Under the pieces are notes generated by a model that was not told the origin of the DNA, ran no database searches, and saw nothing but the letters and a program-made list of their open reading frames with translations. Positions 13,907 to 20,393 of a stretch of DNA of 64,000 nt are shown piece after piece. Each line of letters starts with the position of its first letter. Within the stretch, counting starts at the first letter, position 1. The stretch lies in the NCBI GenBank assembly GCA_001179505.1, contig CDMY01000319.1, positions 59,143-123,142 on the forward strand, in the 5' to 3' direction. The stretch is from Vitrella brassicaformis CCMP3155. Its lineage: Eukaryota > Protista > Chromerida. The translations under genes were made by a program, and so were the position numbers.

Positions 13907-15829
13907 ATGGCCGAGAGCTCGTCATCTTCAGCGGGCCCGGCTCTGCCGCGTCACTGGGAGAGCATTGAGGCTGTGAACGCCGTCTTCCGCCATGGCACCA
14001 TTGAGGCTACGAAGCGCCTGTGCGTTGGCATCTTTCTTCGTGCCTTCACTGACGCACGGCAGGTGGCCGACCTCATTCGAGTTGATGGGGCGGGTCCCAC
14101 TGTGATGCCAGCGCTGCGGCTGCGTGGGTACCCGGCCGGCTCTGAGGAATTCCCATGCCTGGCGCTTGCCATTGACAATCTGACCGACTACGGCATCCCA
14201 TCCATCTGGGCATCAGACAGCCGTGGTCCGCATCCAGTCGCGTTGCCCAAGTGGCGGACACCCGAGCTGCAGGATGACATCATCTGCGCGCTGCTCGAGG
14301 GAGGTGCAGACATCAACGGGGAAGCCGCTGATGATCTGAACGGGCGGCGGCCCATTCGAGTGGCCATCGCGTCGTGCAATGAGAGGGCCTTCCGCCTCTT
14401 GATTGAGCGGGGCGTGCAGCTGAGGGGCCGGATGGTCATGCGGCTGCCACGGCTGGATAGCAAAGACTCGCCGACGAAGGAGCACGAGGCCACACTGATG
14501 TCCTTCTACCGACAGCTCATCCAGAGAGACCCCACCCTCGCGACCGATCGGGTGGTGTCAGGCGACACCCCTTCCGTCTTCTCGCAGGAGTTCTTCGACA
14601 GCCACATGGACCTGATTGTGAGCAACGGTGCGGACGTCATGAGAGCGGGTGTCTCGTCGACGCCATTGCTCAATGCACCACTCTTGGGGTGCAACCGTGC
14701 AGCTGCCGCTCTGTGCCGCCATCTCACGGCTGCCCAAGTTAACAGAGGGGGGCCACACAGCCCGAACCGCACGCCTCTGATGGTTGCTGCTGAGCAGCTG
14801 GATCGCGGCGCTGTGCTGGTGGAGGGCGGTCTCGCGGATGAAGACGAGACGGCCCGGTGGAGGGTCGGAAGGATTCAGCATGACATTCTCACCATCAATG
14901 TGCTGCTGAGAGCGGGGGCAGACATCACCCGGCTGCCCACGGCAACCCAACAGGACCGCCGCCGTCACCAACGGGTGTTGGCGGAGTACAAGAAGGTGCT
15001 CAACGAGCTGGGCGATGTGGTCGTGGCGGCCATCAACGCCGCCCTCGCCCCCCAGCGCGACCACTCGATGACGCTCGCCCGTCTGCTACCCCTGGCGCCC
15101 CATCATGACGGCGCCCGTCCCCACCCAACCCCCTCCAACCTCTCATTCGGCCCACACGAGGCAGAAGGCATTGGCTGGAAGATTGGGGCGTTCCTGCACG
15201 AGCCCTCCGCTGCTGTGGCGACCATCGATGAATACCTGATGGGCGAGTCCCTGCTGAGGCGCCGCGTCCATGCGGCTGTGCTGCATTCCGTCAGCCAGGG
15301 CGCCACACGGACGAGCAGCAACCGGAAGGTGGTCGGGGGGACGCAGTATGTGCAGCAGGAGGGAGGGGCGAAGCGCACCAAGGTGACGGTGCCGCCCCTG
15401 CAGTGCTTCGCCGCCAATGGGGGGCAGCAGGGCGGCGGGCAGCATCGGCTGCTGGGTGTGCGTGAGGTGGTGCATCGGGCCCGGCTGGACGAGGCGACGC
15501 AGCACGGACTGCAGGGGGTGGAGAAGGGCTTCAACGCCGACCTCGGCAATAGCGACTGCCAGTTCCAGTGGCAGCAGCTGGGATATGTCGACAGCAATGG
15601 GGAGTTCATCTCTCTCGCTGCAGCATTCCAGACGCCACCCGCAGCAGCGCCAGCCGCCAGCGACCATGGTGATGGGGAGGATGGGGAGGGTGAGGCGTCG
15701 GACAGCAGTGGGGACGACTTAGACGATGACGAGGGCGATGAGTTTGACGATGGTGAGGGGTGGGAGGAGAGTAATTGGGATGACTTTGATGAGGAGTTCA
15801 GTGATGACTATGACGAAATGGACGATTAG
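13907..15829 (+). CDS. Intronless 640-aa ankyrin-repeat-like protein with an acidic C-terminal tail
   Basis: Single ORF with ankyrin-like segments (ALLEGGADING...RPIRVAIASCNERAFRLLIERGVQL; LIVSNGADV...STPLLNA; NRTPLMVAAE; INVLLRAGADI) and a D/E-rich tail. A probable 5'UTR intron lies at ~13791-13880. Confidence 0.75.
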   Translation: MAESSSSSAGPALPRHWESIEAVNAVFRHGTIEATKRLCVGIFLRAFTDARQVADLIRVDGAGPTVMPALRLRGYPAGSEEFPCLALAIDNLTDYGIPSIWASDSRGPHPVALPKWRTPELQDDIICALLEGGADINGEAADDLNGRRPIRVAIASCNERAFRLLIERGVQLRGRMVMRLPRLDSKDSPTKEHEATLMSFYRQLIQRDPTLATDRVVSGDTPSVFSQEFFDSHMDLIVSNGADVMRAGVSSTPLLNAPLLGCNRAAAALCRHLTAAQVNRGGPHSPNRTPLMVAAEQLDRGAVLVEGGLADEDETARWRVGRIQHDILTINVLLRAGADITRLPTATQQDRRRHQRVLAEYKKVLNELGDVVVAAINAALAPQRDHSMTLARLLPLAPHHDGARPHPTPSNLSFGPHEAEGIGWKIGAFLHEPSAAVATIDEYLMGESLLRRRVHAAVLHSVSQGATRTSSNRKVVGGTQYVQQEGGAKRTKVTVPPLQCFAANGGQQGGGQHRLLGVREVVHRARLDEATQHGLQGVEKGFNADLGNSDCQFQWQQLGYVDSNGEFISLAAAFQTPPAAAPAASDHGDGEDGEGEASDSSGDDLDDDEGDEFDDGEGWEESNWDDFDEEFSDDYDEMDD

Positions 15830-16052
15830 GGGCGGGTCAGTGAGCGGGCTGCCTGCTCGTGTTTCGTGCATGCTTCAGTGCATTTAATCGTGGCAATTTT
15901 ATTCCACGCGGACTTGTCGGCTGTGAATGGCTTGTTTGTTGCCTTTGTATCACATCCTGTGGGGCGGGAACGCCTCGGAGCCTTGATTACGCGAGTCTGA
16001 AATAATAATATATCACGCGTCCCATTATTCTCGCGACGAGCTCTCGTTCGAA

Positions 16053-19000
16053 ATGGAAACACGCGCATCGCCGGCAGCAAGGACATGTTCGCGCCAAGCG
16101 GCGGTCTCCCAGTCCGCCGCCGAGCCGCCTTCAGCCCCTCCGTGCCCGCCTTCTCCTGACGTCAGTCCACATCGCCGCGGCAGCTGTCCGCCTTACCCCT
16201 CTCCCTCTCCCTCTCCCTCTCCCCCTACAACGCCCCCCTCTCCCTCACGCAGACGGCAGCCGCCTGCGAGCGACGCTATTCTGCTGTGGCTGCTGGCCTT
16301 GATGGGCGTGTGCGGCGTGATAGGCAGGCCCAAGACGGCGTGGACGGACAGCAGGAGGGTGATATATCACGTGCTGACGGACCGGTTTGCGGCGGAGGAG
16401 GACGTGTGTGACATGGGCGACTGCCGGTACGGGAGCTACTGCGGCGGGAGCTGGCGGGCCATGGCGGACAAGCTGGACTACCTCGAGGGGCTCAATGTCA
16501 ACGCCATTTGGATCTCACCTGTCACAGAAAACACAGAGTGTGGCTACCATGGTACCTACCTACGCACGCACACACACGCCCCGCACACCGATGCACACAC
16601 ACGGGTCTGCCTGTGTGGTGTGTGTCTGTGGTTTTCAAGGGTATTGGACAAAGAATTGGTCAGCTTTGAACGGGCATTTCGGCGGTGAGGCCGACCTGAT
16701 GGCCCTCACAAGAGCGGCGCACAAGCGCGACATATGGGTGATGGTCGACGTCGTCACCAACCATGTCGGACCAGTCGGCACCCACTACGAGGGTCAGCGC
16801 TTTAACAGACGGCCTTCCTCCTCGCTGCAATATATTGTCGTGGTGGGCCATCCTCTCTCTTTGTGTGTGTGGCAGGTCTGTCGCCGTTCAACAGCAGCAG
16901 TCACTTCCACCCTCCGTGTCCGATAGACTACGACGAGCAGGAGAGCATCGAGCGGTGCTGGCTCATCGACCTGCCTGACCTCAACCACGAGAACCCATTC
17001 GTCAGGTGAGGCGCGGCGCGTGGCACTCCCCTCCCCTCCCCTCCCCTGGCCTCACTGATGGGTGTGTGCATCTTCTTCTCCCGCCTATACTACAGGGAGT
17101 ATCTGATCGACTGGGCTCACCGTCTGGTCGACAAATACTCGTTCGATGGGCTCCGCATCGACACCACCCCTTACGTCCCCAAGACCTTCTGGGTCGACTT
17201 CAGGTCCGCATCAATCAATGAGCCGCAAGCGCCTTGTGTGTGGGTGTGGGTGTGGGTGTGCACTTCAGGCAGTCGTTTGTCAACACCACCTTCACGTTGG
17301 CGGAGGTGCTGCTGTTCGGGCGGACGACAGAGTACTTCTCGTCCTACCAATACGACCACAGTTATGGCAGCCTGCTGGACGGGGTCCTCAACTACCCCCT
17401 CTTCTGGGCGCTGAGGGCGGCTTTCGCCTCGAGACAGTCGATGTGGAACATCGCCAACGCCATGACGGAGACCAAACGACACTACCGGTAGGTATAATCA
17501 CACACGCGCATTCGTATATATGGCGGCACACCCACCGCCACCGCATCTGGTCTGCTCATTTCATTTCGTGCCCCCAGTGATCTGACGTCTCTGGGTATAT
17601 TCCTGGACAACCACGATAAGACCCGTTTTGCCCACCTGCAGAGCGACATGGCCCTCTACAGGAACGCCCTAACATTCGTCCTCACCAGCGAGGCCATTCC
17701 CGTCATCTACTATGGCAGCGAACAGGCTTTTGCGACCGGTTGGTTCCCGCGCACCGCACGCACCACAATATATATTCCCAGACAGAGAGAGAGATGAGAT
17801 GTGTGTGTCGACATTTATCTGTGCAGGTGGGAGTGACAACGCCAATCGTGCGCCGCTGTGGCACAGCGGCTACAACACGACGCACCCCATCTACCAGTTC
17901 ATATCGCACCTCAACGGGCGGCGCATCCGGGGAGACTTCGACGGACCCCAGAGGGAGATCTGGGTGAGCACACAACACACGCATATATCTAATACACCAC
18001 ATCCATCGTGTGCGGTGGGCATCCCTGTGTGCGTGGCGTGTCGTGGTGTGGTGTGTGCGTCAGGTGAGTGACAGCACGTACGCCTTCACACGTGGGTCGC
18101 GGATACTGGTCATCACGACCAATGTGGGTGGGGGCAACAGCGCCTCAATCGACATACCTCTCTACAAACTGCCTCCAGACTTCCAGCCTGGCCTCAAGGT
18201 GACCTGACCCCAAACGCGCCGCACGCACACAATAAATACGCACGTGTGTGTGCAATGTGCGCGTCTGTGTGTCTGTCGCAGGTGTGCTCGATAATTGACA
18301 TCCCCAGGACGGGGGACAAGGCCACCGTGTCATCGGTCGTTACGGAGACGGCGGCTTTAGACAAGGCCAACACAGAGGGAGCCGACTACCAACAAGGAGG
18401 CACTTGGTGAGTGACCACCTACAGCACACCCCGCACACACTCTCAATGCACACAGGACTGACTCTCTCGAGGACCGTATGGCCGAGCATCAGCGTGAGGC
18501 TGCTGCGTCGAATGGGAGCAGCTGGTTCCTCGACAACACCCTCAGCCGCCTCCCCACCGCAGAGATGTGCGCCCTCACCGGAGACGACCGGCGCGACTGC
18601 GGCACCTTCGGCACCAACAGACGCGAATGCGAAGCCAACGGGTTCGTACACACAGAGCGTCATAGCGCATCCATCAACACACACACGTGTGGGTGTGGGT
18701 GTGTGTGGGGTGTGTGGATGGCAGGTGCTGCTGGATGCCCACGCACGAGGGCTCAGCCAGCCCCTGGTGCTTTTTCCCCAGCTCAGAGATGCCGAGCATA
18801 CAGAGGGGCAGGCAGCTGAACCAGCATGAAGGCGAGCCGGCGGCCGCCCAGGCCCAGACGAATCTGGTGCGGGGGCTGCCTGAGCCGGTCATCCCCTTCC
18901 CCCCGGCACGGTGCGGCAGTGAACACGTGACCGAGAAGGTGCCCTGTGGCAAGCCTGATGGGAGCACGGCCGATTGCAGGGTGGGTGGGTGACTGTCGGG

Positions 19001-19849
19001 TGTTGGGTGCTGGGTGGCTGCACAGACAGACAGACAGACAGACAGGGGAGCAGAGAGAGAGAGAGAGACGTCGCTCTCTGTGGTGTGTTCGTTCAGGATG
19101 CGGGTTGTTGCTACGTGCCGACAGCAGAGAGTGGCGATCCCTGGTGCTACTATGCGGTGGCTGTGCCGGGCGGCGACGCCAGCATGTGCGACGTCTCTGG
19201 CGAGAGCAGGAGGCCCTGTGGCGACATGCACCTGGCCACCGCTGCACAATGCGCCGTACGTCTGCCACACACAGGGAGAGGGAGGGAGAGAGAGTGCCTT
19301 GCGTCTGTGTGTGTGTGTGTTTGCAGGCCCAGGGCTGTTGCTTCCGGCCCACTGCGACGAAGGGCGTGCCGTGGTGCTTCCGCCCCACCTACATGGCGGG
19401 TGACGACTTCTGGCCGCGCACACAAAGCGAGTGTGCCGCCCCGGAGGACATCAGGCACCCCTGTGGCGCACCCGACGCGACCCGAGAAGAATGCATCGTA
19501 CGCACACACGAGAAAGAGAAATATATGCTGTGTGGGTGGATCTGTGGATACAATATTTACAATACAGGCGCACGGCTGCTGCTACAGCAAGACCAGCCGT
19601 TCATTCCTCAAGAGCTGCTTCCAGCCGTTCGGCCCGCCTCGGCACAGCGACACGGCCGTCGATGAGCTCGAGGACAGCCGGCCGCTGCCCGGGCGGCTGT
19701 ACCAGGCCCCGCTGGCTGATGCCGAGGGGCCGCAGTGCTTCGTGGTGGGCGACGAGGGGCTGGGTGTGGTGATACCTGATGGGGAGCCCATGGTGCTGCG
19801 GCTGCAGGTGGACATGGATCATGGTGGTGGACAGGCGTCTAGTACTTAG
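16053..19849 (+). CDS. GH13 (Taka-amylase-like) alpha-amylase fused to four C-terminal trefoil/P-type domains
   Basis: Continuous spliced frame with IYHVLTDRF, YCGGSWRAMADKLDYLEGLNVNAIWISP, GYHGYW, DVVTNH (region I), GLRIDT (nucleophile D), AEV (acid/base E), FLDNHD (region IV D) and IPVIYYGSEQ, followed by four C-x9/10-CG-x7/8-C-x3-GCC-x11/12-C units. A hydrophobic segment (AILLWLLALMGVCGVIG) follows a Pro-rich N-terminus. Confidence 0.92.
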
Positions 19850-20393
19850 TAGGGCATGTGTGTGTGTGTGTGTGTGTGTGTGGTGATCGCACGCTCTTAT
19901 GTTGATTGGTGTCAGTGAGTGGGTGGCGCGCAGGCAGGCAGGCAGGCCGTGTGTCGTGCTATATTAGTGTTGGTGAAGATGCTCTCTGACTGACACATGG
20001 ATGGATGTGGCAGGCGTGCGTGCGTGCGACTTTGTTTGTGTGGACGGAAGTGTACCCGTCCACCGTGAGAGCCTTGATTGTTTGCTGTGCACTGCAGCAT
20101 GGCGACATCCATCCATCCATCGACTCGTTCGATCATTTCAGGGTCGATAAGAGTCACACACACACACACACAAAACGAGCGGCATGGCAATGGCAAGGGT
20201 CAATAAGATAAAGGGTCGGTCACACACAGGCACTCACAAACACACGTACTTCTTGACAAACACGTTGCAACCCTTTACAACTCTGTCTGTCTCTCCAGCC
20301 GACCCTCCCTCAACTCAATGCACTCACTCATGCCTCCTTGCCATGCGAGGATGCCCCCACCCCCCACACACACATGTCGCGTCTGTCTATCTA

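What the first reader, a model, noticed from the sequence alone, without database searches (positions are those of the whole stretch)
16053..19849. Alpha-amylase (GH13) fused to four tandem trefoil/P-type domains: an unfamiliar carbohydrate-enzyme architecture
Seen: one spliced frame joins a Taka-type alpha-amylase with all catalytic residues (RIDT, AEV, DNHD), through the linker ...QQGGTW|TDSLEDRMAEH..., to four six-cysteine modules: CALTGDDRRDCGTFGTNRRECEANGCCWMPTHEGSASPWCF; CGSEHVTEKVPCGKPDGSTADCRDAGCCYVPTAESGDPWCY; CDVSGESRRPCGDMHLATAAQCAAQGCCFRPTATKGVPWCF; CAAPEDIRHPCGAPDATREECIAHGCCYSKTSRSFLKSCF. Known: the C..CG..C...GCC...PWCF pattern is the trefoil domain of animal TFF peptides and of GH31 enzymes (sucrase-isomaltase, maltase-glucoamylase, lysosomal acid alpha-glucosidase), and GH13 amylases usually carry CBM20/CBM48-type appendages instead. 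Inference: the array may be a new glycan-binding or anchoring module on a protist amylase, converging on the trefoil-plus-glucan-hydrolase design of animal gut enzymes.
Basis: partly seen in the sequence, partly recalled or inferred. Interest (0 to 1): 0.82.

Follow-up and report, generated by a model that had tools for sequence, protein, structure and literature searches.

The report
Amylase with nested trefoil lectin array
The coral-associated alga Vitrella brassicaformis expresses a secretory-pathway, fungal-type starch-cutting enzyme with four 'trefoil' modules (the sugar-binding fold of animal mucus peptides) looped into its last domain; I found no paper describing this, but one-trefoil versions exist in choanoflagellates, so it is an elaborated variant, not a new kind.

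Summary
A 14-exon GT-AG gene at 16053-19849 (+) encodes about 906 aa. It has a hydrophobic leader, a complete GH13 subfamily-1 (Taka/"Dictyo"-type) alpha-amylase with all catalytic motifs, and four Pfam Trefoil domains. Spliced contigs cross eight introns, including the amylase-to-trefoil join (18407-18455). An MMETSP ORF and the public Vitrella protein CEM02157.1 / A0A0G4EUZ7 carry the same fusion.

1. The array is not a tail. It sits inside amylase domain C, between two conserved cysteines that are usually about 8 residues apart and here are 354 apart. The last domain-C hairpin follows trefoil 4.
2. The design is not unique. Acanthoecid choanoflagellates (Savillea, Bicosta) and an environmental protein carry one trefoil at the same site. 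An ichthyosporean and another environmental protein carry an N-terminal one. Trefoil 1 groups with the choanoflagellate amylase trefoils, and the amylase trees put the two groups next to each other.
3. Only trefoil 1 keeps both TFF ligand-contacting side chains.

Vitrella paralogues carry PAN/apple modules instead. The likely role is a secreted amylase tethered by a lectin-like array; this is untested. I rate it a new variant of a known kind, of moderate interest. Other notes of this scan report trefoil fusions on other Vitrella enzymes; I did not check those.

The parts
16053..19849 (+). Whole gene: 14 exons. They are 16053-16551, 16640-16792, 16876-17005, 17096-17203, 17269-17487, 17578-17738, 17827-17963, 18064-18198, 18282-18406, 18456-18641, 18725-18980, 19097-19255, 19327-19497 and 19568-19849. 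The product is 906 aa.
   Evidence: The frame is open through all GT-AG junctions. Eight of the 13 introns are confirmed by spliced contigs. Residues 121-906 are identical to public protein P0032, and residues 394-906 to the MMETSP ORF P0001.
16275..16325 (+). Hydrophobic segment (model residues 75-91) immediately before the mature amylase start. It is either a signal peptide or a type II signal anchor. The 74 residues before it are Pro/Ser-rich and their status is uncertain.
   Evidence: Kyte-Doolittle mean is about 2.1 over 19 residues. Vitrella paralogues have an ordinary signal peptide at the equivalent place, followed by the same EW..RRV.Y..DRF start. No RNA contig covers exons 1-4.
16359..18299 (+). 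GH13_1 alpha-amylase: domains A and B and the first part of domain C. Motifs: DVVTNH at 16747-16764; the nucleophile in GLRIDT at 17148-17165; the acid/base in AEV within 17294-17314; DNHD within 17600-17617. This part ends at the first conserved domain-C cysteine, in KVCSIID.
   Evidence: Pfam PF00128 scores 148.8 bits. The best solved relatives are Mucorales and Aspergillus GH13_1 amylases, with E 4e-92. The AF2 model has pLDDT >90 over P0032 residues 10-400, and aligns with Z 44, rmsd 1.8 A to 6sav.
18300..18567 (+). Unstructured linker at the start of the insertion.
   Evidence: pLDDT is <50. There is no Pfam match. A spliced contig crosses the join with 53 letters on its shorter side.
18568..18773 (+). 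Trefoil 1 (split by intron 10, phase 2). It keeps Asp before Cys2 and Trp in PWCF, the two TFF3 ligand-contacting side chains.
   Evidence: Pfam half-hits. 55% identity over 42 aligned residues to the trefoil of the Savillea parva amylase, E 8e-16. It groups with the choanoflagellate amylase trefoils on the only starred branch of the trefoil tree.
18849..18899 (+). Degenerate copy of the domain-C terminal hairpin (hp1, ...NLVRGLPEPVIPF). It lacks the conserved cysteine.
   Evidence: MAFFT aligns the C-termini of most homologues here. AF2 uses it as the last strands of domain C, with pLDDT about 84. It has no BLASTP similarity to a paralogue's hairpin and ranks only 4th in the PSSM scan.
18912..19150 (+). 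Trefoil 2 (split by intron 11, phase 0). It has Pro before Cys2 and keeps the Trp.
19187..19380 (+). Trefoil 3 (split by intron 12, phase 0, at the same position as in trefoil 2). It has Pro before Cys2 and keeps the Trp.
   Evidence: Best Pfam stretch. The AF2 model from an 83-sequence alignment has pLDDT 85.9. All 27 Foldseek matches are trefoil domains; TFF1, TFF3 and GAA match at TM 0.71-0.79, rmsd about 1.9 A.
19432..19621 (+). Trefoil 4 (split by intron 13, phase 0, at the same position). It has six cysteines but Pro before Cys2 and Ser in place of the Trp, so it is probably not ligand-competent in the TFF manner.
19736..19810 (+). The domain-C terminal hairpin proper (hp2, C.VV..EGLGVVIPDGEP.VL..). 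It starts with the second conserved domain-C cysteine.
   Evidence: It is the best PSSM match in the whole protein (score 12.2, z 5.5), equal to the true hairpins of relatives. HMM positions 55-78 align here. BLASTP to the hairpin of paralogue P0042 gives E 3e-4. The MSA-free ESM Atlas model aligns to plain amylases over residues 1-778.

Best explanation
The gene encodes a secretory-pathway GH13 subfamily-1 endo-alpha-amylase of Vitrella brassicaformis.

Shown:
- The gene is spliced and transcribed as one unit.
- The catalytic machinery is intact.
- A hydrophobic leader directly precedes the mature amylase start.
- About 350 residues holding four trefoil (P-type) domains are inserted in a loop of domain C. 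The insertion lies between two conserved cysteines that are normally about 8 residues apart, so the last domain-C hairpin is encoded after the array.
- One-trefoil versions of the same nested design exist in acanthoecid choanoflagellates, and trefoil 1 is their counterpart.
- Trefoils 2-4 share an intron position and group with one another, pointing to a Vitrella-specific addition.

Inferred:
- The array works as a disulfide-stabilised, lectin-like tether hung on domain C, the place where other amylases carry surface binding sites or are followed by CBM20. It would hold the enzyme on a polymeric glycan and raise its local concentration.
- The ligand is most likely an alpha-glucan. A mucin-type O-glycan of the alga's own coat or of coral mucus is the alternative.
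- Trefoil 1 is the best candidate for the active binding site. Trefoils 2-4 may serve as spacers or have changed specificity.
For: Gene model and splicing.

Public proteins with the same fusion. P0001 is an MMETSP ORF. P0032 is CEM02157.1 / A0A0G4EUZ7.

Domains.

GH13_1 identity and catalytic motifs.

Trefoil fold.

Nested topology:
- The alignment with choanoflagellate enzymes shows the trefoil between LCN.. and C.V..G...V.
- Split HMM match of domain C.
- PSSM scan.
- Spacing of the two cysteines is 6-9 residues in 84 of 85 matched plain enzymes, against 74-76 in the one-trefoil enzymes and 354 here.
- BLASTP of the tail to a paralogue's hairpin.
- The ESM Atlas model aligns to plain amylases out to residue 778.

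Shared origin of trefoil 1:
- Amylase trees give Vitrella 4 + acanthoecid 3 against the rest at 98/93.
- 51-55% identity of trefoil 1 to the Savillea trefoil.
- Trefoil tree, 96*.

Secretory routing:
- The leader directly abuts the mature start, with no room for a plastid transit peptide. Paralogues have plain signal peptides.
- Six-cysteine domains need an oxidising compartment (established knowledge).

Lectin role of trefoils: TFF1-3 bind GlcNAc-alpha-1,4-Gal through Asp/Asn20 and Trp47, and the GAA trefoil binds isomaltose (PMC7221086).
Against: - No binding or activity data exist.
- Trefoils 2-4 have Pro at the Asp/Asn ligand position, and trefoil 4 also lacks the Trp, so most of the array may not bind sugar in the TFF manner.
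- The full-length AF2 model completes domain C with the degenerate hairpin after trefoil 1. On that reading only trefoil 1 is nested and trefoils 2-4 form a tail. That model depends on a MAFFT alignment that placed homologue ends there.
- The 5' end is not covered by RNA contigs. The first 74 residues are low-complexity and may be partly intronic or untranslated, so secreted versus membrane-anchored is open.
- Run X1 and the MMETSP ORF may derive from the same RNA data set, so they may not be independent.
Confidence: 0.6

Rival explanations
1. The array is a coat or mucus anchor rather than a substrate-binding module. The trefoils would bind mucin-type O-glycans, on the alga's own mucin-like surface proteins or in coral mucus. 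This would keep a set of secreted enzymes, the amylase among them, at the cell surface, much as TFF peptides bind mucins.
For: TFFs are mucin O-glycan lectins (PMC7221086). Chromerids have mucin-like proteins and O-glycosylation pathways, and many secreted sugar-binding proteins (PMC4501334). Notes of this scan report trefoils on unrelated Vitrella enzymes: an AA12 dehydrogenase, a GH16, an arylsulfotransferase and an expansin-like protein (not tested here). A module shared by enzymes with different substrates suggests a generic anchor. The paralogous amylases carry PAN/apple adhesion modules instead.
Against: The ligand residues are kept only in trefoil 1. The trefoils of glucan-processing GH31 enzymes are proposed to bind (iso)maltose. 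The counterpart of trefoil 1 is specifically associated with amylases in choanoflagellates, which fits a substrate-related role.
Confidence: 0.2
2. The array is mainly structural: a protease-resistant, disulfide-rich stalk or stabiliser, or a protein-protein interaction module, with no lectin activity.
For: Three of the four domains lack the Asp/Asn ligand position and one also lacks the Trp. Trefoils 2 and 4 are on very long branches. The inter-domain linkers are disordered.
Against: All 24 cysteines and the GCC[FWY] cores are kept. The fold is predicted with confidence. Trefoil 1 keeps both ligand residues.
Confidence: 0.12
3. The enzyme remodels the alga's own wall alpha-glucan, as a hydrolase or transglycosylase working with an Ags-like alpha-glucan synthase, rather than digesting external starch or glycogen. 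The modules would position it in the wall.
For: A note of this scan reports a fungal-type alpha-1,3-glucan synthase-like gene in this genome (not tested here). In fungi some GH13_1 members are wall-associated glucanotransferases (own knowledge). The enzyme is routed to the secretory pathway.
Against: The histidines of DVVTNH and DNHD, which I recall are replaced in the fungal Agt-type transferases, are retained. The nearest solved relatives are ordinary secreted amylases.
Confidence: 0.06
4. It is an annotation or assembly artefact: two neighbouring genes, an amylase and a trefoil protein, wrongly joined.
For: The public model is N-terminally truncated. The MMETSP ORF starts at an internal Met. 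If intron 9 is retained, a stop follows at once (the ORF ending at 18410).
Against: A spliced contig crosses 18406|18456. Three DNA-holding runs are colinear with the window. There is no start codon plus leader before trefoil 1. The amylase domain C is completed only by the hairpin encoded after trefoil 4. The same nested design occurs in three other proteins.
Confidence: 0.02

Closest known systems
GH13 subfamily 1 alpha-amylases (Taka-amylase A 2GUY/7TAA; Mucorales amylases 6SAV/6SAO; the 'Dictyo-type' amylases of amoebozoans, choanoflagellates and basal animals, PMC7003070)
   Same: The catalytic domain, domain B and domain C are shared, with about 40-45% identity. All conserved sequence regions and the Asp/Glu/Asp triad are present. 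Both have a secretory leader.
   Different: Domain C is interrupted by about 350 residues carrying four trefoils. CBM20 is absent. The gene sits in an alveolate alga.
Acanthoecid choanoflagellate amylases with one nested trefoil (Savillea parva EP00038_P010416 = P0040, Bicosta minor EP00729_P011305 = P0087, environmental P0091)
   Same: The insertion site in domain C is the same, between the two conserved cysteines. Trefoil 1 is 51-55% identical to the Savillea trefoil. The amylase clades are adjacent in the tree (98/93).
   Different: They have one trefoil and a 74-76-residue loop, against four trefoils and 354 residues here. There is no degenerate second hairpin. They are database predictions, and I found no paper on them.
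GH31 enzymes with trefoil domains (lysosomal acid alpha-glucosidase GAA, sucrase-isomaltase, maltase-glucoamylase)
   Same: An alpha-glucan-processing hydrolase is combined with P-type trefoil domain(s). The model of trefoil 3 superposes on the GAA trefoil at TM 0.79 and 43% identity. The GAA trefoil is reported to bind isomaltose.
   Different: The catalytic family and fold history differ (GH31 versus GH13). In GH31 the trefoil is single and N-terminal to each catalytic unit, not a nested array. The fusions are independent.
Trefoil factor peptides TFF1-3
   Same: Six-cysteine P-type fold. Trefoil 1 keeps the Asp and Trp that contact GlcNAc-alpha-1,4-Gal in TFF3.
   Different: TFFs are free one- or two-domain peptides of vertebrate mucosa. 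Here each trefoil is split by an intron, and three of the four lack the Asp/Asn.
Vitrella paralogues: CEM02347.1 (amylase + four PAN/apple, P0039), CEM11535.1 (amylase + PAN, P0042), CEM38500.1 (amylase with a 28-residue loop, P0038)
   Same: They form one GH13_1 clade with the window protein (99/96). All are secretory. All carry cysteine-rich or extended C-terminal regions.
   Different: Their modules are PAN/apple domains appended after an intact domain C, not trefoils nested in it.

Membership tests
GH13 subfamily 1 alpha-amylase | (beta/alpha)8 catalytic domain recognised by the family profile | tested here: met
   PF00128 scores 148.8 bits against a cut-off of 22. The AF2 model aligns to 6sav with Z 44.2, rmsd 1.8 A over 410 residues.
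GH13 subfamily 1 alpha-amylase | Catalytic Asp (region II), Glu (region III) and Asp (region IV), plus the histidines of regions I and IV | tested here: met
   DVVTNH, GLRIDT, AEV and DNHD align to the corresponding motifs of 6sav and 6sao.
GH13 subfamily 1 alpha-amylase | Closest relatives are GH13_1 members rather than other subfamilies | tested here: met
   The top solved hits are 6sav, 6sao, 6sau, 3vm7 and 2guy (E 4e-92 to 4e-74), well ahead of CGTases. The top database hits are fungal, amoebozoan and holozoan 'Dictyo-type' amylases.
GH13 subfamily 1 alpha-amylase | Contiguous C-terminal beta-sandwich domain C | tested here: not met
   Domain C is split. The profile matches P0032 residues 347-411 and 750-773, with the trefoil array between them. 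All the parts are present, but they are not contiguous.
GH13 subfamily 1 alpha-amylase | Endo-hydrolysis of alpha-1,4-glucan | not testable with these tools
   Needs an enzyme assay.
Trefoil / P-type domain (PF00088) | Profile match above the curated threshold | tested here: met
   125.8-128.5 bits in four stretches, against a cut-off of 21. Exons 12 and 13 alone score 29 and 36.5 bits.
Trefoil / P-type domain (PF00088) | Six cysteines in the spacing C..CG..C..GCC..C | tested here: met
   All four modules match the pattern. The six cysteines are invariant in an 83-domain alignment.
Trefoil / P-type domain (PF00088) | Three-loop trefoil fold | tested here: met
   The trefoil 3 model has pLDDT 85.9. 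All 27 Foldseek matches are trefoil domains, with TM 0.71-0.79 and rmsd about 1.9 A for TFF1, TFF3 and GAA. Trefoils 1, 2 and 4 were not folded separately.
Trefoil / P-type domain (PF00088) | 1-5, 2-4, 3-6 disulfide pairing | not testable with these tools
It needs mass spectrometry or a solved structure.
TFF-type lectin site | Asp/Asn before Cys2 and Trp before Cys6 (TFF3 Asp20 and Trp47) | tested here: inconclusive
   Trefoil 1 has Asp and Trp. Trefoils 2 and 3 have Pro and Trp. Trefoil 4 has Pro and Ser. Binding was not measured.
GH31 + trefoil glucosidases (GAA/SI/MGAM) | GH31 catalytic domain | tested here: not met
   There is no GH31 match; the catalytic domain is GH13. The protein resembles the design but is not a member.

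The most novel reading that the evidence does not exclude
The trefoil nested in amylase domain C is a single invention shared by a chromerid alga and acanthoecid choanoflagellates. It would have been passed between marine protist lineages by gene transfer, or be far older than animal TFFs. In Vitrella the trefoil then became a general plug-in lectin that anchors many secreted enzymes to mucin-like glycans of the cell coat or of the coral host's mucus. That would place the origin and first function of the 'animal' trefoil lectin among protist glycan-processing enzymes.
Probability: 0.2. Interest if true: 0.65.

Novelty: new variant of a known kind. Interest (0 to 1): 0.45.

Why it matters
Trefoil domains are mostly discussed as vertebrate mucus peptides and as N-terminal parts of GH31 glucosidases. 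This gene shows them used as an expandable module inserted into a loop of a GH13 amylase, with homologous one-trefoil forms in choanoflagellates. That gives a natural series of zero, one and four trefoils, plus PAN-bearing paralogues, for testing three things. First, whether trefoils act as carbohydrate-binding modules for alpha-glucans, which no CBM family currently covers as far as I know. Second, how domain C tolerates large insertions. Third, where trefoil lectins came from. It also corrects the public Vitrella gene model, which lacks the leader and the first beta-strand.

Tried and rejected
- Word-index searches with the MMETSP ORF and with the trefoil array alone returned essentially only the protein itself. 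No close copy of the four-trefoil array exists at that sensitivity.
- The look-up of encoding contigs found no gene with the P0001 product.
- Pfam finds nothing in the pre-trefoil linker or in the C-terminal tail as isolated pieces. The tail was identified only with a home-made profile and PSSM of domain-C ends.
- The full-length AF2 model gave low confidence for the array and tail. Its choice of the degenerate hairpin was traced to the MAFFT alignment, so I did not take it as deciding the topology.
- A candidate extra intron in exon 1 (16112-16252, GT..AG, in frame) would shorten the leader to a normal signal peptide.
- Literature searches for trefoil + GH13/amylase, trefoil + Vitrella, and trefoil + protist, plus the GH13_1 survey and the chromerid genome paper, gave no description of this architecture.
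- The idea that all trefoil-bearing amylases stem from one fusion was rejected. The N-terminal-trefoil enzymes (Abeoforma, environmental) sit in a different, well-supported clade and have a different topology.
- Its first 120 residues were searched only as exon 1.
Full report
**Observation**

Reading 16000-20000 and joining fourteen exons at GT-AG sites gives one open frame of 906 codons, ending at the stop at 19847-19849.

- Pfam finds Alpha-amylase in exons 1, 2, 4 and 6.
- In exons 10-14 it finds alternating halves of the 43-position Trefoil profile. Each trefoil is split by an intron just before its GCC motif. Exons 12 and 13 pass the curated threshold even as half-plus-half pieces.
- No further trefoil motif occurs elsewhere in the window.

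**Transcript evidence**

One run (X1, listed as "RNA?") yields contigs that skip exactly my introns 5, 7, 8, 9, 10, 11, 12 and 13 with GT..AG ends. Runs X2 and X3 hold the colinear unspliced DNA. It is bridged with 53 letters on the shorter side.

A search of the 1.84-billion representative library with exon 13 returned P0001. P0001 is a 513-aa MMETSP transcriptome ORF identical to model residues 394-906. Its 90% cluster also holds P0032, which is CEM02157.1 / UniProt A0A0G4EUZ7 of Vitrella brassicaformis CCMP3155. P0032 is 786 aa, is named "P-type domain-containing protein", and is identical to model residues 121-906.

So the fusion is already present in public predictions. The organism is a coral-associated chromerid alga. 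X1 and the MMETSP ORF may be the same RNA data, so I count them as one line of RNA evidence. No RNA contig covers exons 1-4.

**The amylase**

- P0032 scores 148.8 bits on PF00128.
- Its best solved relatives are GH13 subfamily-1 enzymes: Mucorales 6sav and 6sao at E about 1e-92, then Aspergillus Taka-amylase.
- The motifs DVVTNH, GLRIDT, AEV and DNHD align to the catalytic regions.
- An AF2 model built on 103 sequences has pLDDT above 90 over the first 400 residues of P0032. It aligns to 6sav at Z 44.2, rmsd 1.8 A.

The public model starts at an internal Met. It lacks the first beta-strand (VIYHVLTDRF) and the hydrophobic segment (model residues 75-91) that directly precedes the mature start. 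Three Vitrella paralogues have ordinary signal peptides followed by the same start.

There is no room for a plastid transit peptide, and six-cysteine domains need an oxidising compartment. I therefore infer a secretory or surface location. The 74 residues before the hydrophobic segment are Pro/Ser-rich. They are encoded partly by a CT-rich repeat of the kind seen in this gene's introns. Signal peptide versus type II anchor is therefore unresolved.

**The trefoils**

- On the contiguous public proteins, Pfam gives 125.8-128.5 bits in four stretches.
- Exon 13 alone finds TFF3, TFF1 and pancreatic spasmolytic polypeptide among solved structures.
- I aligned 83 trefoil domains taken by reference from the hits. 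The six cysteines are invariant.
- I folded trefoil 3 on that alignment: pLDDT 85.9.
- All 27 Foldseek matches are trefoil domains: TFF1, TFF3, GAA, MGAM, SI, PSP and ZP1. TFF1, TFF3 and GAA match at TM 0.71-0.79, rmsd about 1.9 A and 42-46% identity.

In TFF3 only Asp20 (just before Cys2) and Trp47 touch the sugar. The GAA trefoil is reported to bind isomaltose (PMC7221086). The four trefoils here compare as follows.

| Trefoil | Residue before Cys2 | Residue at the Trp position |
|---|---|---|
| 1 | Asp | Trp |
| 2 | Pro | Trp |
| 3 | Pro | Trp |
| 4 | Pro | Ser |

**Topology: the main correction**

I aligned the C-terminal parts of the window protein, three trefoil-bearing relatives and two paralogues. 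In the relatives the single trefoil lies inside domain C. It sits between the strand ending ...LCN.L and the final hairpin C.V..G...V....G.P.V.V.

The tail of the window protein, after trefoil 4, contains that hairpin (C.VV..EGLGVVIPDGEP.VL). The evidence:
- A profile built from the last 75 residues of 100 plain GH13_1 amylases matches P0032 in two pieces, 347-411 and 750-773.
- In an ungapped PSSM of the hairpin, residues 750-774 are by far the best site in the protein (score 12.2, z 5.5). That equals the true hairpins of relatives.
- BLASTP of the tail against the hairpin of paralogue P0042 gives E 3e-4.
- The MSA-free ESM Atlas model of this protein aligns to plain 450-aa amylases over residues 1-778.

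The loop lies between two conserved cysteines. Their spacing is:

| Protein | Residues between the two cysteines |
|---|---|
| 84 of 85 matched plain enzymes | 6-9 (mostly 8) |
| Vitrella paralogue P0042 | 7 |
| Vitrella paralogue P0039 | 15 |
| Vitrella paralogue P0038 | 28 |
| One-trefoil enzymes P0040, P0091 | 74-76 |
| Window protein | 354 |

A degenerate second hairpin-like stretch follows trefoil 1 (...NLVRGLPEPVIPF). MAFFT aligned most homologue ends there, and the AF2 model used it to close domain C. It lacks the cysteine and has no detectable similarity to a paralogue's hairpin. Either way, at least trefoil 1 is nested. The sequence evidence favours nesting of the whole array.

**Distribution and history**

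Among the 120 best relatives of P0032, five others combine PF00128 with PF00088.

| Protein | Source | Trefoil position |
|---|---|---|
| P0040 | Savillea parva (acanthoecid choanoflagellate) | Nested in domain C |
| P0087 | Bicosta minor (acanthoecid choanoflagellate) | Nested in domain C |
| P0091 | Environmental | Nested in domain C |
| P0054 | Abeoforma whisleri (ichthyosporean) | N-terminal |
| P0050 | Environmental | N-terminal |

Three Vitrella paralogues carry four PAN/apple domains, one PAN domain, or no recognised module.

The careful maximum-likelihood tree (36 rows, 458 columns) shows (the quick tree agrees):
- The four Vitrella enzymes form one clade (99/96), with the window protein sister to the rest.
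- That clade and the acanthoecid nested-trefoil clade lie together on one side of a 98/93 branch.
- The N-terminal-trefoil enzymes sit within the holozoan clade (96/88).

Trefoil 1 is 55% identical over 42 aligned residues to the Savillea trefoil, E 8e-16. It joins the choanoflagellate amylase trefoils on the only starred branch of the trefoil tree. Trefoils 2-4 lie near each other there (few columns and long branches).

Intron positions agree with this. Trefoils 2-4 share a phase-0 intron two codons before GCC. The intron of trefoil 1 is phase 2 and three codons downstream.

The simplest history:
- There were two or more independent GH13_1-trefoil fusions.
- The nested type is shared by Vitrella and acanthoecids, through transfer or old common descent. 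The tree is unrooted, so no direction can be given.
- Three more trefoils were added in Vitrella.

**Function (inferred)**

The protein is a secreted or surface endo-amylase. Its domain C carries a multivalent, disulfide-stabilised, lectin-like array that tethers it to a polymeric glycan. The best candidate ligands are alpha-glucans, by analogy with the GAA trefoil and given the amylase-specific association of trefoil 1.

The rivals are:
- a mucin or coat anchor;
- a mainly structural stalk;
- a role in remodelling the alga's own wall alpha-glucan.

Notes of this scan, which I did not test, report trefoils on several unrelated Vitrella enzymes and an Ags-like glucan synthase in this genome. 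The first favours a generic anchoring module.

**Literature**

Searches for trefoil with GH13 or amylase, with Vitrella and with protists found no description of this architecture. Neither did the GH13_1 survey (PMC7003070) or the chromerid genome paper (PMC4501334). The genome paper notes only that chromerids have many secreted sugar-binding proteins.

**Verdict**

- The thing is a new variant, nested and expanded, of a known kind: a glycoside hydrolase plus lectin-like modules.
- It is visible in public databases but, as far as I could find, undescribed.

- The joined 906-aa model was not used as a query in any search tool. Public proteins identical to residues 121-906 and 394-906 stood in for it, and the first 120 residues were searched only as exon 1.

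Noticed in passing
window 16053-16412: The public Vitrella model CEM02157.1 starts at an internal Met (model residue 121). It omits the hydrophobic leader and the first conserved beta-strand of the amylase. The upstream ORF supplies both.
   Followed up: partly
window 16187-16234 (also 17000-17057, 17230-17267): A CT-rich low-complexity repeat that the reads tool skipped as repeated. In exon 1 it encodes a PSPSPS run, and the same kind of repeat fills this gene's introns. A GT..AG interval at 16112-16252 would be in frame and would shorten the leader to a normal signal peptide. This is untested.
   Followed up: partly
window 18405-18410: If intron 9 is retained, a TGA follows the Trp codon immediately. 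That would give an amylase lacking the trefoils and also the last domain-C hairpin. No evidence for or against such transcripts was obtained.
   Followed up: no
window 13907-15829 (+): The neighbouring 640-aa single ORF has weak ankyrin-repeat matches, all below Pfam thresholds, and a long acidic Asp/Glu tail.
   Followed up: partly
P0002, P0006, P0009, P0019 (environmental) and P0003 (Alexandrium minutum, MMETSP): These marine protist proteins carry four to six tandem trefoils, followed in P0002 and P0006 by a hydrophobic (probable transmembrane) stretch and then a conserved C-terminal domain. In P0009 that region has a weak PARP-catalytic match. They are the closest relatives of the window's trefoil exon outside Vitrella, and the architecture is unusual.
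   Followed up: partly
P0029 (environmental, 452 aa): A protein-kinase-like domain followed by two C-terminal trefoils. One of them may be the fifth member of the starred branch that joins trefoil 1 to the choanoflagellate amylase trefoils; membership was not printed.
   Followed up: no
P0038 (Vitrella CEM38500.1), residues 462-490: This paralogue has a 28-residue Pro-rich loop at the same domain-C site where the trefoils are nested. It may be a remnant of a lost insertion. It also has a hydrophobic C-terminal end.
   Followed up: no
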